DNA from: Macrostomum lignano
Lineage: Eukaryota
Assembly (NCBI GenBank): GCA_002269645.1
Contig: NIVC01000595.1
Coordinates: forward strand, 1 to 36,020
Length of the DNA: 36,020 nucleotides
Reading direction: 5' to 3'
Of this stretch, positions 3,527 through 27,835 are shown piece after piece (position 1 is the first letter of the stretch; the number at the start of each line of letters is the position of its first letter). The position numbers were made by a program, and so were the translations under genes. The notes beneath the pieces are model-generated. The model saw nothing but the letters and a program-made list of their open reading frames with translations, was not told the DNA's origin and did no database searches.

Positions 3527-3599
3527 CGACCACGCCAGGACACGAACCTGGAATCTTCTGATCCGCAGTCAGACGCGTTATCCATTGCGCCACGCGGCC
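3527..3599 (-). tRNA. tRNA-Arg variant with anticodon GCG and T-loop A58>T; probable pseudogene
   Basis: 73 nt, identical to the other six copies except anticodon ACG>GCG (plus strand CCGCAG vs CCGTAG) and GGTTCGTGTCC vs GGTTCGAGTCC. T6 terminator at 3512-3517. Confidence 0.85.
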
Positions 3600-3837
3600 T
3601 CGCAGCAGGACTGCCTCAGTCTGTCAAATAAAATTGAAAAATACTGAATCTGATTTCCAGATTTATTTGACCTGCTATCGTCAGCCAGAGCCGTCACAAA
3701 GTGGTTATGTGCGGCAGGTTTTCTATATTCAGATATCTTCGTATACCTGCTGAACCTGTCGCATTGTCGCTTGCCTTAATAACCTTTTCCATTCTCTCCA
3801 TTGTAATACTAAATAGCTGACTGTGAGCATGATATGG

Positions 3838-4085
3838 GCCAGTCACACCTGATAATGATCAAGCCAGGGACACCTAATAATTATCAAGCCAGTCACACCT
3901 GATAATGATCAAGCCAGTCACACCTGATAACGATCAAGCCAGTCACACCTGATAATTATCAAGCCAGTCACACCTGATAATGATCAAGCCAGTCACACCT
4001 GATAATGATCAAGCCAGTCACACCTGATAACGATCAAGCCAGTCACACCTGATAATTATCAAGCCAGTCACACCTGATATTGATT
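3838..4085. repeat. 25-bp minisatellite (GATAATGATCAAGCCAGTCACACCT), about 10 copies
   Basis: Direct tandem units. Confidence 0.95.
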
Positions 4086-4341
4086 GAGACAGTCAACAAG
4101 TAAGCCATTTTAACAATTGAAAATTAATTGTATGAAATATTTTAGTAGTATTACATGCAATTTTTTCAATATATTTTATGAGTTCAACGTGAATTAAAAA
4201 TCTTTTTTCTATCATTAGTTAATCGTACCTTTGAGCCTATAATTAAATGAATATATAATACACAGATACAACCAGTTTTTGCAGCTTATATCAAAGCTTG
4301 TCAAAAGATGTTCACTCTTGATTACTCATTAAAGTAGTATC

Positions 4342-5136
4342 CTAGTTGCAGTTGTCAGCTGAGCACACTGAGCAGTCTCCATAGTTAGGCAAGGCGGTGA
4401 GGCTTGAGCAGCCGTCCTTGTCCAGGTAGCAGGCCCTGTAGTACTGAAAATGTTTTTGGCCAATCATTTTATATTACTGCCACAAGTAGTAAGAGGTCGC
4501 AACAGGCCATGTGTTTAAACGGATTTAGACAAAACTGCAATTCGACACTGGTAGAAGTCACGTCATACCGATTTCCTGCCGCCGATGGCAACTGAGAACC
4601 TGATGCAGTAGTCATAACCTGCCACACAGTTTACACTGGCTGCTCTACCATCTGGCGATGCAGCGTTGGATGCTGAGTGACATCGAAGTCCAGCTGCGGG
4701 GTCTGGGCGAATCGGGGTATGTTGTGAGCTGTGACTGGGTGCTGAAACTACCGTTCTGACTGTGACTGAGTGCTGTGGCTGTGACTGTGGCTGTGACAGT
4801 GACAGTGACTGTGAATGTGACTGTGACACCGTGACTGTGACTGTGACACTGTGACTGTGACACCGTGACTGTGACACCGTGACTGTGACACCGTGACTGT
4901 GACTGTGACACCGTGACTGTGACAATGCGCCTGTAATTGTTAATGTGACAGTGACAGTGACTGTGACTGTGACAGCAGTCTCCCATGATGCAAACAATGA
5001 AAGTGACTCTTTTCATTTCACACTAACCTACAAGTATCTCTCAGAACTCAAATCATAACGCCAGATTACAAAACTCACCGATTGCATTGAAAGCTAGCAA
5101 TAGCAGAATAGCAGAGCAGGCAGTTTGTCTCAGCAT
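4342..5136 (-). CDS. Secreted three-finger (Ly6/uPAR, Quiver-like) protein, 94 aa, copy 1; exons 5136-5079, 4693-4569, 4443-4342
   Basis: Splices in frame (58+125+102 nt) with GT-AG sites to MLRQTACSAILLLLAFNAIAGLRCHSASNAASPDGRAASVNCVAGYDYCIRFSVAIGGRKSYYRACYLDKDGCSSLTALPNYGDCSVCSADNCN*. Signal peptide, 8 mature Cys, terminal C-x2-C-x4-CN. Same exon phases (1, 0) as the paralog at 28581-29632. Confidence 0.88.
4757..4974. repeat. (TGTGAC)n-type hexamer microsatellite in intron 1 of three-finger gene copy 1
   Basis: Imperfect GTGACT/GTGACA run. Confidence 0.9.
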
Positions 5137-5212
5137 TCTGTGGCTCTTCTGTCTAAACTTTTCTGTCCGCGGAGAATAGCAAATAAAGAATGCCAGTTTC
5201 GATGTCAGAACC

Positions 5213-5219
5213 TTAAATA
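5213..5219 (-). promoter_or_regulatory. TATA-like box (TATTTAA) of three-finger gene copy 1
   Basis: 28 nt upstream of an initiator-like GCATTC (A at 5191) and 83 nt upstream of the ATG; conserved in copy 2. Confidence 0.5.
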
Positions 5220-5378
5220 GCTGGGGCGCTCAGCTTGAACCAACCAGTACGCCAGCACTGCATTGTGCGTGAGTACGGCATACAGACAGAACTTCCACAT
5301 CTGATGTACAACTGCAGTCAGAGGTGCATATTGAACTCTGAGATTATTTATTTACAAAAAAATATTAATAGCTCAGAG

Positions 5379-5451
5379 CGACCACGCCAGGACTCGAACC
5401 TGGAATCTTCTGATCCGTAGTCAGACGCGTTATCCATTGCGCCACGCGGCC
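5379..5451 (-). tRNA. tRNA-Arg(ACG)
   Basis: GGCCGCGTGGCGCAATGGATAACGCGTCTGACTACGGATCAGAAGATTCCAGGTTCGAGTCCTGGCGTGGTCG; intact A and B boxes; T7 terminator at 5356-5362. Confidence 0.97.
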
Positions 5452-5606
5452 CTCGAAATTTGGTAGTCCTTGGGCATTCCTTTATCCTTTATCTGTTTGA
5501 TCACATGCCAATCTCTTAATGGATACGATTTCAGTAGTAATGATAGAGCATGTTAAATCTTTTGAGGAAAAACTGAATTCCAGAAAAATTCGAATTATTC
5601 GAATTC

Positions 5607-5955
5607 CACCTATTCCAATGCCTCACTGACACCTATTCCAATGCCTCACTGACACCTATTCCAATGCCTCACTGACACCTATTCCAATGCCTCACTGACA
5701 CCTATTCCAATGCCTCACTGACACCTATTCCAATGCAGCACTGACACTTATTCCAATGCCTCACTGACACCTATTCCAATGCCTCACTGACACCTATTCC
5801 AATGCAGCACTGACACCTATTCCAATGCAGCACTGACATCTATTCCAATGCAGCACTGACACCTATTCCAATGCAGCACTGACATCTATTCCAATGCAGC
5901 ACTGACATCTATTCCAATGCAGCACTGACACCCATTCCAATGCAGCACTGACACC
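5607..5955. repeat. 23-bp minisatellite (ACACCTATTCCAATGCCTCACTG / ..GCAGCACTG), about 15 copies
   Basis: Direct tandem units between tRNA copies 2 and 3. Confidence 0.95.
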
Positions 5956-26380: not shown

Positions 26381-26456
26381 TCTGTGGCTCTTCTGTCTAA
26401 ACTTTTCTGTCCGCGGAGAATAGCAAATAAAGAATGCCAGTTTCGATGTCAGAACC

Positions 26457-26463
26457 TTAAATA
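26457..26463 (-). promoter_or_regulatory. TATA-like box (TATTTAA) of three-finger gene copy 2
   Basis: Same position relative to the ATG as in copy 1. Confidence 0.5.
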
Positions 26464-26622
26464 GCTGGGGCGCTCAGCTTGAACCAACCAGTACGCCAGC
26501 ACTGCATTGTGCGTGAGTACGGCATACAGACAGAACTTCCACATCTGATGTACAACTGCAGTCAGAGGTGCATATTGAACTCTGAGATTATTTATTTACA
26601 AAAAAATATTAATTGCTCAGAG

Positions 26623-26695
26623 CGACCACGCCAGGACTCGAACCTGGAATCTTCTGATCCGTAGTCAGACGCGTTATCCATTGCGCCACGCGGCC
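26623..26695 (-). tRNA. tRNA-Arg(ACG)
   Basis: Identical 73-nt sequence with downstream T7 run. Confidence 0.97.
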
Positions 26696-26850
26696 CTCGA
26701 AATTTGGTAGTCCTTGAGCATTCCTTTATCCTTTATCTGTTTGATCACATGCCAATCTCTTAATGGATACGATTTCAGTAGTAATTATAGAGCATGTTAA
26801 ATCTTTTGAGGAAAAACTGAATTCCAGAGAAATTCGAATTATTCGAATTC

Positions 26851-27342
26851 CACCTATTCCAATGCCTCACTGACACCTATTCCAATGCCTCACTGACACC
26901 TATTCCATGCCTCACTGACACCTATTCCAATGCCTCACTGACACCTATTCCAATGCCTCACTGACACCTATTCCAATGCCTCACTGACACCTATTCCAAT
27001 GCCTCACTGACATCTATTCCAATGCAGCACTGACACCTATTCCAATGCCTCACTGACACCTATTCCAATACCTCACTGACACCTATTCCAATGCCTCACT
27101 GACACCAATCCCATGCCTTACTGACATCTATTCCAATGCCTCACTGACACCTATTCCAATGCCTCACTGAAACCTATTCCAATGCCTCACTGACACCTAT
27201 TCCAATGCCTCACTGACACCTATTCCAATGCCTCACTGACACCTATTCCAATGCCTCACGTACACCTATTCCAATGCCTCACTGACACCTATTCCAATGC
27301 CTCACTGACACGTGACACCTATTGCAATGCAGCACGGAGACC
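26851..27342. repeat. 23-bp minisatellite, about 21 copies
   Basis: ACACCTATTCCAATGCCTCACTG units. Confidence 0.95.
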
Positions 27343-27423
27343 CACCGGATTTCTTGCCAAACGACTATTTTGTTTTTGTGGCCATATAAAAATACAAGTA
27401 AAATCGAAAAATATATTTCAGAG

Positions 27424-27496
27424 CGACCACGCCAGGACTCGAACCTGGAATCTTCTGATCCGTAGTCAGACGCGTTATCCATTGCGCCACGCGGCC
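27424..27496 (-). tRNA. tRNA-Arg(ACG)
   Basis: Identical 73-nt sequence; T5 run at 27407-27411. Confidence 0.97.
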
Positions 27497-27762
27497 CTCG
27501 GCATTTGGCAGTCCTTGAGCACGGATTTCTAATTTTATTTACAAAAGCGGAGCTACTGCCAAGCATGTTTGATCACGCGGCCTGCATGTGACTTTGCGAG
27601 GCTTGGCTGGGAATGTTGAAATCGGAAACGGCTTTAAGAGGCTCTTGGTGAACACTCGTTTTTAAAGGCAACAACTGCATTTCAGTTTTGTCTAATGTCT
27701 CTAATGTCCACCGATAACTACTTTAATGTTCTTAACTTAAATGTAAGGAAAAAAATTTAAAA

Positions 27763-27835
27763 CGACCACGCCAGGACTCGAACCTGGAATCTTCTGATCC
27801 GTAGTCAGACGCGTTATCCATTGCGCCACGCGGCC
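27763..27835 (-). tRNA. tRNA-Arg(ACG)
   Basis: Identical 73-nt sequence; T4 immediately downstream and T7 at 27749-27755. Confidence 0.97.

What the first reader, a model, noticed from the sequence alone, without database searches (positions are those of the whole stretch)
3527..27835. tRNA genes act as borders of shuffled, satellite-bearing cassettes
Seen: seven co-oriented tRNA-Arg genes delimit spacer modules in the order t1-A-t2-B-t3-C ... B'-t4-A-t5-B-t6-C(short)-t7. A = 25-mer array + secreted three-finger gene, B = 23-mer array, C = 22-mer array. Each spacer type has its own tandem repeat. Established analogy: tRNA-STR arrays of Entamoeba. Inference: identical tRNA genes serve as recombination hubs or insulators that amplify a protein-coding passenger, which is unusual for an animal tRNA cluster.
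Basis: partly seen in the sequence, partly recalled or inferred. Interest (0 to 1): 0.75.

Follow-up and report, generated by a model that had tools for sequence, protein, structure and literature searches.

The report
Flatworm tRNA-Arg cluster with minisatellite spacers
This is a cluster of arginine tRNA genes in the flatworm Macrostomum lignano, with repeat-filled spacers and a small Ly6-like gene, which changes copy number by recombination at the tRNA genes and in the repeats; it is a clear example of a known kind of gene-array evolution, not a new mechanism.

Summary
Seven co-oriented tRNA-Arg genes (six identical ACG copies and one degenerate copy) sit in the order t1-A-t2-B-t3-C ... B'-t4-A-t5-B-t6-C(short)-t7, and each spacer type has its own 25-, 23- or 22-mer array.

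The window is a whole contig (NIVC01000595.1) of the Macrostomum lignano Mlig_3_7 assembly. Three other contigs of that assembly carry the same locus, which allowed a real test.

- **Copy 2 is not a misassembled allele.** A 462-kb contig carries both the copy-1 side and the same B'-t-A-t-B-t-C-t7 block.
- **Modules are joined differently in different contigs, and the switch falls at the tRNA.** Examples are U|A versus U|B and B|A versus B|C. Homology ends within the tRNA plus at most 7 nt.
- **tRNAs are not the only breakpoints.** The outer ends of the older duplication lie in minisatellites. The [t-A-t-B] unit that is amplified on the 462-kb contig could equally have spread through the 0.35-0.8 kb B arrays.
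- **Other dynamics.** Gene conversion homogenises the promoter/exon 1/tRNA segment. Array lengths vary up to about 25-fold.
- **Repeats are not specific to the tRNA spacers.** Tandem arrays are dense across the whole region.

Insulator function is untested. Overall this is a tandem tRNA gene array evolving by unequal exchange, with a Ly6-like protein-coding gene inside the repeat unit.

The parts
3526..3599 (-). t1, tRNA-Arg, degenerate edge copy (A34G gives anticodon GCG; A58T; 2-nt leader deletion). Left flank U (unique), right flank A-left.
3600..5377 (-). Spacer A1: A-left unique 3600-3837; 25-mer array 3838-4095 (10 copies); Ly6-like gene; 241-bp promoter region next to t2.
4342..5136 (-). 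Ly6/uPAR-like (three-finger-like) secreted protein gene, copy A1. Exons 5136-5079, 4702-4569 and 4443-4342 give 97 aa. Intron 1 holds the TGACTG microsatellite 4757-4973.
5378..5451 (-). t2, tRNA-Arg(ACG); flanks A-right | B-left; 241 bp upstream of the A1 ATG.
5452..6039 (.). Spacer B1 with 23-mer array 5607-5955 (15 copies here, 32 in L001).
6040..6113 (-). t3, tRNA-Arg(ACG); flanks B-right | C-left.
6114..6952 (.). Spacer C1 with 22-mer array 6325-6952 (28 copies). Homology to copy 2 ends at 6309, just before the array, and no tRNA follows the array.
6953..17543 (.). Interposed segment X: unique 6953-8534, 39-mer array 8535-14976 (162 copies; 124 in L001, 11 in L005), unique 14977-17543 (replaced by an unrelated 466 bp on NIVC01000719.1).
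17544..18299 (.). B': 23-mer array 17544-18224 plus a diverged B-right flank. It lacks B-left and an upstream tRNA, so it is truncated at the array edge.
18300..18373 (-). t4, tRNA-Arg(ACG); flanks B'-right | A-left.
18374..26621 (-). Spacer A2: 25-mer array 18599-25353 (271 copies, higher-order periodicity); Ly6-like gene copy A2 (exons 26380-26323, 25968-25835, 25709-25608; intact; 3 aa differences from A1); microsatellite 26023-26218.
26622..26695 (-). t5, tRNA-Arg(ACG); flanks A-right | B-left.
26696..27422 (.). Spacer B2 with 23-mer array 26851-27311 (20 copies).
27423..27496 (-). t6, tRNA-Arg(ACG); flanks B-right | C-left.
27497..27762 (.). Spacer C2 (short): C-left plus about 1.5 units of the 22-mer plus a short C-right remnant. 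The L005 homologue has about 4 units and a longer C-right.
27763..27835 (-). t7, tRNA-Arg(ACG); both flanks unique (C-end | V); right edge of the cluster.
28581..29170 (-). Paralogous Ly6-like gene (last two exons seen) with a C-terminal hydrophobic, GPI-type tail; 49% identical to A. It shows that the tRNA cluster sits inside a local Ly6-like gene family.

Best explanation
The window is nuclear DNA of the flatworm Macrostomum lignano. It holds a small cluster of tRNA-Arg(ACG) genes lying inside a local family of Ly6/uPAR-like genes. The cluster behaves as a tandem multigene array built from three spacer modules:
- A: a Ly6-like gene, a 25-mer minisatellite and an intronic TGACTG microsatellite;
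- B: a 23-mer array;
- C: a 22-mer array.

Its history has layers.
1. An older segmental duplication gave two t-A-t-B-t-C blocks, now 2-5% diverged and present in two sub-genome copies. The outer junctions of that duplication lie in minisatellites.
2. Homologous exchange between non-equivalent tRNA copies then re-joined modules. The 74-bp identical genes are the only sequence shared by unlike spacers. This produced, for example, the loss of a 't-B' segment next to U in the window haplotype.
3. A [t-A-t-B] unit of 3.65-3.95 kb was tandemly amplified on the other sub-genome copy.
4. Gene conversion keeps the promoter/exon 1/tRNA/B-left segment nearly identical within a haplotype.
5. Slippage and unequal exchange change every minisatellite 2- to 25-fold.

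Status of each step. The structures, junction positions, copy numbers and divergence mosaics are shown. Non-allelic homologous recombination (or fork-stalling and template switching at Pol III genes) as the mechanism is inferred. Any effect of the tRNA genes on transcription of the Ly6-like gene is not tested.
For: **Identity of the sequence.** The protein hit is to M. lignano BOX15_Mlig009825g1. The window is NIVC01000595.1, 36,020 bp.

**Independent contigs.**
- L001 (NIVC01000596.1) matches window 1-16311 at 99-100%.
- L002 and L005 (NIVC01000719.1, 462 kb) carry PP2C-U-t-B-t-A-t-B-t-A-t-B ... 39mer-B'-t-A-t-B-t-C-t7-V.
- L004 matches the window's right half at 99.8%.

**Junctions.** Flank clustering gives seven junction types from 6 left and 4 right flank classes. 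The printed junctions show homology switching at the tRNA plus 4-7 nt (HSP ends).

**Mosaic divergence between copy 1 and copy 2.** There is 1 mismatch in 403 bp in exon 1 plus promoter, against 43 in 1320 bp elsewhere. My Poisson arithmetic gives P of about 3e-5.

**Concerted evolution.** In exon 1/promoter the copies group by contig (0-5 differences within a group, 10-17 between groups). In the 3' part of the gene they group by position (site patterns).

**Gene integrity.** All A copies are intact except for a 1-bp gap in L004 exon 1. The gene is in the transcript-based annotation.

**Array copy numbers**:
- 25-mer: 10, 271, 26.5, 14.5, 16 and at least 156 copies;
- 39-mer: 162, 124 and 11 copies;
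- 23-mer: 15 to 35 copies.

**tRNA genes.** 58.8 bits against RF00005, intact cloverleaf, and T-runs close downstream.
Against: - Only one locus (in three or four assembly copies) was examined, so there is no genome-wide test.
- The direction of each event (deletion or insertion) cannot be fixed without an outgroup.
- Because tRNAs are the only conserved part of old, diverged repeat units, some 'junctions at tRNAs' (B|A versus B|C) could be inherited from ancient unit duplications and need not be recent exchanges.
- 10.4 kb of NIVC01000719.1 between L002 and L005 was not seen.
- Mlig_3_7 is a PacBio/Canu draft with known redundancy and chimeric scaffolds. The two L002 units are identical outside the arrays, so assembly inflation of that duplication cannot be fully excluded.
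- 74-82 bp is a short substrate for homologous exchange.
Confidence: 0.7

Rival explanations
1. Passive old tandem array. tRNA-plus-spacer units duplicated long ago and the spacers diverged beyond recognition, so tRNAs only look like borders because they alone are conserved. Current copy-number change runs through whole-unit or minisatellite homology, and the tRNAs have no special recombination role.
For: - B-left and C-left share about 25 nt next to the tRNA, and all tRNAs share the leader CGAG.
- The 23-mer and 22-mer consensus sequences are weakly similar (p about 0.01-0.02, uncorrected).
- The outer ends of the older duplication lie in minisatellites.
- B arrays of 0.35-0.8 kb at over 90% identity are better exchange substrates than a 74-bp tRNA.
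Against: - U is 97% identical between the window and L002, yet it is joined through one intact tRNA to A-left in one and to B-left in the other. Both right flanks are 92-96% identical to their counterparts elsewhere. That requires a recent event with both ends inside tRNA genes.
- The 25-mer shows no similarity to the other two units.
Confidence: 0.2
2. Assembly artefact. Copy 2, or the variant junctions, come from mis-joined haplotigs or sub-genome copies in a redundant draft assembly.
For: - Mlig_3_7 has 180-312 Mb of duplicated sequence.
- 36% of its assembly length is in scaffolds judged chimeric between sub-genomes.
- The window overlaps L001 and L004 at 99-100%, which looks like redundant assembly.
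Against: - The flanks of copy 2 (B' on the left, t7 and V on the right) have no similarity to the flanks of copy 1.
- The same B'-t-A-t-B-t-C-t7 block lies about 30 kb from PP2C on an independent 462-kb contig that also carries the copy-1 side.
- A1-type and A2-type genes carry position-specific substitutions shared across contigs.
- The junctions sit within 1-1.5 kb of unique sequence, well inside single long reads.
Confidence: 0.05
3. Functional insulator cassette. The paired tRNA genes are kept because, as Pol III/TFIIIC-bound elements, they shield the Ly6-like gene from the surrounding satellite chromatin. The cassette is then amplified under selection for dosage.
For: - Every A gene copy is bracketed by two co-oriented intact tRNA genes. 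One lies 241 bp upstream of the ATG.
- The promoter/exon 1/tRNA segment is the best conserved part between copies.
- tDNA barrier activity is established in yeast and mammals (my own knowledge).
Against: - There are no occupancy or expression data.
- The same conservation is explained by gene conversion, because the copies group by contig.
- The GPI-type paralogue has a tRNA on one side only.
- The edge tRNA t1 is decaying differently in each contig, which argues against constraint on that border.
Confidence: 0.1
4. Transposable-element origin. The modules are mobile elements (a tRNA-derived SINE, a Pol III-targeting element, or a Helitron or MITE carrying satellites) that inserted at tRNA genes.
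For: A hAT-like MITE (23-bp TIRs, 8-bp TSD) has inserted in the 25-mer array of the L002 units, so mobile elements are active in this region.
Against: - The tRNAs are complete cloverleaves with their own leaders and T-run terminators. They are not SINE heads.
- Modules A, B and C show no TIRs, TSDs or coding capacity.
- Insertion next to a tRNA would not duplicate the tRNA.
Confidence: 0.03

Closest known systems
Entamoeba histolytica/E. dispar tRNA gene arrays with inter-genic short tandem repeats (Tawari et al. 2008, PMC2652664)
   Same: - Clustered, co-oriented tRNA genes are separated by spacer-specific tandem repeats.
- Repeat number varies between isolates or haplotypes while the repeat unit stays the same.
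- Slippage, unequal exchange and concerted evolution are invoked, and Pol III genes are discussed as fork barriers and recombination hot spots.
   Different: - In Entamoeba nearly all tRNA genes of the genome are in 25 array types, repeated many times, making over 10% of the genome. Units mix different tRNA species, and the abstract describes their contents only as tRNA genes (some also 5S RNA) with short, microsatellite-like STRs between them.
- Here there is one isoacceptor and 4-9 genes per locus, with at most a few unit repeats. The repeats are 22-25-bp minisatellites up to 6.7 kb long, and a Pol II gene with introns lies inside the unit.
Arabidopsis thaliana chromosome 1 tRNA Tyr-Tyr-Ser triplet array (Kane et al. 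2010, PMC2886086)
   Same: - A multi-tRNA unit is the basal unit of expansion.
- Unequal crossing-over is the model.
- Copy number differs between orthologous arrays, and evolution is concerted within a lineage.
   Different: - The Arabidopsis array has 27 units, and the abstract describes each unit only as three pre-tRNA genes; it mentions no protein-coding gene and no spacer minisatellites.
- Here there are only 1 to at least 2.5 units, heterogeneous modules (A, B, C) and very large satellite expansions.
tRNA genes as rearrangement breakpoints and replication-fork barriers in yeasts (Gordon et al. 2009, PMC2675101; Deshpande & Newlon 1996 and Admire et al. 2006 as cited in PMC2652664)
   Same: Structural differences between related chromosomes end at tRNA genes.
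   Different: The role of Ty LTRs and replication origins near yeast breakpoints is from my own knowledge; I did not read PMC2675101 beyond its listing. Here the tRNA genes themselves are the direct repeats that recombine. No fork-barrier data exist for this species.
tDNA chromatin barriers and insulators (yeast HMR tDNA, mammalian tDNA clusters; my own knowledge)
   Same: Intact A and B boxes; tRNA genes bracket a Pol II gene.
   Different: No functional or occupancy evidence here. The resemblance is positional only.
Ly6/uPAR (three-finger) domain proteins, Quiver/QVR subfamily (Pfam PF17064)
   Same: - Signal peptide and small size.
- 8 Cys in the mature part, with the C-terminal ...C-x2-C-x4-CN motif.
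- The paralogue has a GPI-type tail.
- The top structural neighbours are three-finger proteins and uPAR.
   Different: - The Pfam score (19.8 bits) is below the gathering threshold of 27.3.
- The model has low confidence (pLDDT 59).
- The A copies end right after CN, with no GPI signal.
- There are almost no detectable relatives outside M. lignano.

Membership tests
Entamoeba-type tRNA-STR arrays | Short tandem repeats between adjacent clustered tRNA genes, with copy number variable between isolates | tested here: met
   Every inter-tRNA spacer holds an array. Copy numbers differ 2- to 25-fold among four contigs.
Entamoeba-type tRNA-STR arrays | Array unit repeated head-to-tail many times; most tRNA genes of the genome organised this way | tested here: not met
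   There is one unit plus a diverged second block in the window, and at least 2.5 units on NIVC01000719.1. The genome-wide organisation is not testable with these tools.
Entamoeba-type tRNA-STR arrays | Units made only of tRNA (and sometimes 5S) genes and STRs, as the paper's abstract describes them | tested here: not met
   An intact, annotated three-exon Ly6-like gene lies in module A.
Tandem tRNA arrays evolving by unequal crossing-over (Arabidopsis t-unit type) | A multi-tRNA unit is the unit of expansion | tested here: met
   On L002 the [t-A-t-B] unit has a period of 3650-3949 bp, and the two units are identical outside the arrays.
Tandem tRNA arrays evolving by unequal crossing-over (Arabidopsis t-unit type) | Copy-number difference between orthologous or homeologous arrays | tested here: met
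   There are 7 tRNAs and 2 A genes in the window, against at least 9 tRNAs and at least 3 A genes on NIVC01000719.1.
Tandem tRNA arrays evolving by unequal crossing-over (Arabidopsis t-unit type) | Concerted evolution within a lineage | tested here: met
   In the exon 1/promoter segment the copies group by contig and not by position. Both window copies have Leu13, and all NIVC01000719.1 copies have Met13.
tDNA insulator / barrier | Intact internal promoter (A and B boxes) and terminator | tested here: met
   t2-t7 match the tRNA model at 58.8 bits, with TGGCGCAATGG and GGTTCGAGTCC present and T-runs 1-15 nt downstream. The window's t1 has A58T in the B box.
tDNA insulator / barrier | TFIIIC/Pol III occupancy and measurable barrier or enhancer-blocking activity | not testable with these tools
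   This needs ChIP or CUT&RUN and reporter assays.
Ly6/uPAR three-finger domain (Pfam QVR PF17064 / UPAR_LY6) | Profile match above the curated threshold | tested here: not met
   QVR gives E = 0.0017 and 19.8 bits, against a cut-off of 27.3.
Ly6/uPAR three-finger domain (Pfam QVR PF17064 / UPAR_LY6) | Three-finger fold | tested here: inconclusive
   The AlphaFold model has pLDDT 59.4. No PDB match reaches E <= 0.001, but nearly all of the top 25 are three-finger proteins, uPAR, Lynx1 or receptor ectodomains.
Ly6/uPAR three-finger domain (Pfam QVR PF17064 / UPAR_LY6) | Signal peptide, 8-10 Cys, C-terminal CN motif, often a GPI signal | tested here: met
   The N-terminus is MLRQTACSAILLLLAFNAI, there are 8 Cys in the mature part, and the protein ends ...CSVCSADNCN*. 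The paralogue at 28581-29170 has a hydrophobic tail.
tRNA-derived SINE | tRNA-related head fused to an unrelated body and tail, dispersed, without its own terminator directly after the tRNA part | tested here: not met
   These are full cloverleaves with a discriminator base followed by T-runs. The shared leaders and trailers indicate DNA-level duplication.

The most novel reading that the evidence does not exclude
In M. lignano, Pol III genes and the minisatellites next to them might form a general, Entamoeba-like organisation in an animal genome. In this reading, active tRNA genes stall forks, seed and expand neighbouring minisatellites, and together with them act as a built-in engine for copy-number change of embedded Pol II genes. 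Here that gene is a lineage-specific secreted Ly6-like protein, and its dosage would be under selection.
Probability: 0.12. Interest if true: 0.7.

Novelty: new variant of a known kind. Interest (0 to 1): 0.4.

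Why it matters
The locus is a compact, well-resolved example of how a tRNA gene cluster, minisatellites and a protein-coding gene evolve together in a neopolyploid animal genome. Several sub-genome copies are available for comparison.

It shows at near base-pair resolution that 74-bp tRNA genes can be the exchange points that delete or duplicate neighbouring modules. It also shows that minisatellites in the same locus break and expand just as readily.

There are two practical consequences. Loci of this kind are probably a cause of fragmentation and redundancy in M. 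lignano assemblies. They also create unannotated copy-number variation of genes. If the pattern proved to be genome-wide, it would extend the Entamoeba-type tRNA/STR organisation to an animal.

Tried and rejected
- **Minisatellite units derived from the tRNA sequence.** There is no similarity beyond shuffled controls (p = 0.21-0.99). Rejected.
- **The three spacer repeats as diverged versions of one unit.** Only 23-mer versus 22-mer is weakly similar (p about 0.01-0.02, uncorrected), and the 25-mer is not. Left as a weak hint.
- **Relic tRNAs or other RNA genes in the window.** A permissive Rfam scan found none.
- **Coding or TE content in the interposed X segment.** There are no Pfam hits and no terminal repeats.
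- **Further relatives of the Ly6-like protein.** A profile search of 5.8 billion proteins returned only P0001. The exhaustive HMMER search returned 4 hits, so the family could not be used to fetch more loci.
- **Structure prediction.** The model has low confidence, so the fold search is only suggestive.
- **The unseen 10.4 kb of NIVC01000719.1 (323067-333482) and the first 9.2 kb of NIVC01000596.1.** These could not be fetched because no annotated gene lies there.
- **The misassembled-allele hypothesis.** Tested and rejected.

Full report
**1. What the sequence is**

The protein encoded in spacer A matches a Macrostomum lignano protein, BOX15_Mlig009825g1 (77% identity with my first exon model, 99% with the corrected one). 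A member of the neighbouring PP2C protein cluster lies on a contig of exactly 36,020 bp. Fetching it returned the window itself, so the window is the whole contig NIVC01000595.1 of assembly GCA_002269645.1, Mlig_3_7.

M. lignano is a neopolyploid flatworm. Its assembly holds three sub-genome copies (S, L1, L2) that differ by about 2% in SNPs, and 15% of the genome is simple or tandem repeat (PMC5730564; PMC10733133).

**2. Check of the observation**

ARAGORN and Rfam each find seven tRNA-Arg genes, all on the minus strand, at the stated places. A permissive Rfam scan adds nothing.

t2-t7 are identical over the gene. t1 has A34G (anticodon GCG), A58T in the T loop, and a 2-nt deletion in its leader. 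All seven have T-runs just downstream.

TRF confirms a private array for each spacer type: a 25-mer in A, a 23-mer in B and B', and a 22-mer in C. C2 keeps only about 1.5 units.

With the arrays masked, 3524-6309 aligns to 18298-27692 in five collinear blocks at 95-99% identity. The order t1-A-t2-B-t3-C ... B'-t4-A-t5-B-t6-C(short)-t7 is therefore correct.

Each A spacer holds an intact three-exon gene on the minus strand. For A1 the exons are 5136-5079, 4702-4569 and 4443-4342, and the splice sites are canonical. The product is a 97-aa protein with a signal peptide and 8 Cys in the mature part, ending ...CSVCSADNCN.

Evidence for the three-finger assignment is suggestive and not conclusive:
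- Pfam gives a sub-threshold match to the Quiver/Ly-6 family (E = 0.0017).
- A low-confidence AlphaFold model (pLDDT 59) has three-finger proteins, uPAR and Lynx1 as almost all of its best PDB neighbours, but none is significant.

So 'three-finger-like, secreted' is reasonable but not proven. The TGACTG microsatellite lies in intron 1.

**3. Independent copies of the locus**

Exact-protein look-ups brought in three further contigs of the same assembly.

| Locus | Contig | Relation to the window |
|---|---|---|
| L001 | NIVC01000596.1 | Reverse complement of window 1-16311 at 99-100%, with different array lengths |
| L004 | NIVC01003882.1 | Matches window 21498 onward at 99.8% |
| L002 + L005 | NIVC01000719.1 (462 kb) | The same locus at 92-99% identity, i.e. 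another sub-genome copy |

On NIVC01000719.1 the order is: PP2C - U - t - B - t - A - t - B - t - A - t - B - [10.4 kb not seen] - X - 39-mer - B' - t - A - t - B - t - C(4 units) - t7 - V - ORF94.

Three conclusions follow.
- Copy 2 of the window is not a misassembled allele of copy 1. The same B'-t-A-t-B-t-C-t7 block lies about 30 kb from PP2C on an independent large contig. In addition, the flanks of copy 2 are unrelated to those of copy 1.
- The A1/A2 duplication predates the split of these sub-genome copies. The distal copies share Ala34Pro and Ser77Leu across contigs. In the 3' part of the gene, A1-type and A2-type copies differ by 16-18 sites in 661, while same-position copies differ by 0-9.
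- The [t-A-t-B] unit, with a period of 3650-3949 bp, is tandemly repeated on NIVC01000719.1. Its units are identical outside the arrays. Both carry the same MITE insertion, so that duplication is recent.

**4. Where the breakpoints are**

I classified the 60 nt on each side of all 22 tRNA copies and printed the junctions.
- Left-flank classes: U, A-right, B-right, B'-right, C-end and C-end'.
- Right-flank classes: A-left, B-left, C-left and V.
- Observed junctions: U|A-left (window, L001), U|B-left (L002), A-right|B-left, B-right|C-left, B-right|A-left (L002, twice), B'-right|A-left, and C-end|V.

U is 97% identical between the window and L002 up to and through the tRNA. After the shared leader 'ctcg', one continues as A-left and the other as B-left. 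In the same way, B-right (99-100% identical) continues after 'ctcggca' either as C-left or as A-left.

At least the U|A versus U|B difference therefore needs a recent event whose two ends lie in tRNA genes. The simplest such event is exchange between two direct tRNA copies about 1 kb apart, which removes or adds one 't-B' segment.

Other junctions are not at tRNAs.
- Homology between the two blocks ends at 6309, just before the 22-mer array. After that array, C1 runs into unrelated sequence X with no tRNA.
- B' lacks its B-left part and its upstream tRNA, and begins at the array edge.
- The sequence between the 39-mer array and B' is 2.57 kb in the window but an unrelated 466 bp on NIVC01000719.1.
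- The recent [t-A-t-B] amplification could have arisen by exchange between B arrays, which are far longer homologous substrates than a tRNA.

Both tRNA genes and minisatellites are therefore junction sites.

**5. Other dynamics**

Divergence between copy 1 and copy 2 is mosaic.

| Segment | Divergence |
|---|---|
| A-left | 4.5% |
| Exons 2-3 region | 2.3% |
| Exon 1 plus promoter | 0.25% (1 of 403) |
| t2/t5 | 0% |
| B-left | 1.9% |
| B-right | 6% |
| C-left | 4.9% |

One mismatch where about 13 are expected gives a Poisson P of about 3e-5 by my arithmetic.

In that low-divergence segment the copies group by contig and not by position. Four clustered sites (5100-5206) are shared by both window copies against L001. 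This is the signature of gene conversion, and the tract is bounded by the intron microsatellite and the B array.

The tRNA next to U carries a different private substitution in each contig (A34G plus A58T; C66T; G10T). That fits an edge copy escaping homogenisation.

Array lengths vary widely:
- 25-mer: 10, 271, 26.5, 14.5, 16 and at least 156 copies;
- 39-mer: 162, 124 and 11 copies;
- 23-mer: 15 to 35 copies;
- 22-mer: 28, 1.5 and about 4 copies.

The 271-copy array shows a higher-order pattern of about 34 units, repeated about five times.

**6. Are the satellites tied to the tRNAs?**

Only weakly, if at all. Tandem arrays cover 53% of the window. The flanks without tRNAs are also crowded with arrays: six in the 10 kb upstream of PP2C on L002, five in the 10 kb downstream of ORF94 on L005, and four in window 27.8-36 kb.

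The repeat units show no similarity to the tRNA. Only the 23- and 22-mers resemble each other, and only faintly.

**7. Interpretation**

The best reading is a small tandem tRNA-Arg array embedded in a local Ly6-like gene family. A GPI-type paralogue lies at 28581-29170. The array evolves by unequal homologous exchange, gene conversion and array slippage.

The tRNA genes act as exchange points mainly because they are the only sequence shared by unlike modules. Pol III-dependent fork stalling may add to this, as discussed for Entamoeba and yeast, but it is not shown here. The insulator idea remains possible and untested.

**8. Comparison and novelty**

The Entamoeba tRNA/STR arrays (PMC2652664) share the feature of STRs between clustered tRNA genes with variable copy number. 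They differ in scale, in tRNA mix and in unit content (the paper's abstract describes only tRNA and 5S genes with STRs). Two of the three membership criteria I listed are not met.

The Arabidopsis Tyr-Tyr-Ser array (PMC2886086) is the closer mechanistic match: a multi-tRNA unit of expansion, copy-number variation and concerted evolution. All three of those criteria are met here.

What is unusual is the combination in an animal of spacer-specific kilobase-scale minisatellites with an intron-containing, transcribed Pol II gene inside the repeat unit, together with junction switches at tRNAs that can be read directly between sub-genome copies. I rate it a new variant of a known kind, of moderate interest.

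Noticed in passing
L002 16046-16492 (twin copy at about 19695-20142): An insertion of about 447 bp lies inside the last 25-mer unit. It has perfect 23-bp terminal inverted repeats (CACAGATACTAGAATAACTAGAT) and an 8-bp target-site duplication (GTCACACC), so it is a hAT-like MITE. It is absent from the window's A1 and A2 and from L005. Both L002 units carry it, which dates their duplication after the insertion.
   Followed up: partly
window 2933-3191 and 35597-36020: Arrays of the same 15-mer, CCCTGGTGCTAAAG(C/T), bracket the whole tRNA/Ly6 cluster in direct orientation. They are also present at the equivalent places on NIVC01000719.1. Their significance is unknown.
   Followed up: no
window 28581-29170 (-): A second Ly6-like paralogue, 49% identical to A, with a C-terminal hydrophobic GPI-type tail and an AGTT microsatellite (29185-29558) in the equivalent intron. 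No protein in the database searched corresponds to it.
   Followed up: partly
window 31498-31782 (+) and about 32750-33075 (-): ORF94 is an annotated small Cys-rich secreted protein found identically on four contigs. Next to it is an ML-domain (PF02221) gene whose annotated length differs among contigs (75, 154 and 191 aa).
   Followed up: no
window 18599-25353: The 271-copy 25-mer array has a higher-order structure, a pattern of about 34 units recurring about five times, and distinct variant blocks at its two ends. The homologous array has only 10-27 copies elsewhere.
   Followed up: partly
window 14977-17543 versus L005 1547-2012: Between the 39-mer array and B', the two sub-genome copies hold unrelated sequence: 2.57 kb versus 466 bp. 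Neither has Pfam-detectable coding content in the window.
   Followed up: partly
window 725-1336; L001 13887-14298; L002 11056-11833: A 42-mer minisatellite inside an intron of the PP2C gene varies between 14.5, 9.9 and 18.5 copies in the three contigs.
   Followed up: no
window 3526-3599; L001 11582-11655; L002 14076-14149: The tRNA copy next to the unique flank U has different private substitutions in each contig: A34G plus A58T, C66T, and G10T. It looks like a decaying edge copy, or else these are consensus errors in the draft assembly.
   Followed up: partly
L004 4824-4880: Exon 1 of the A2-type gene on NIVC01003882.1 has a 1-bp gap that shifts the frame. This may be a PacBio consensus error and not a real pseudogene.
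   Followed up: no
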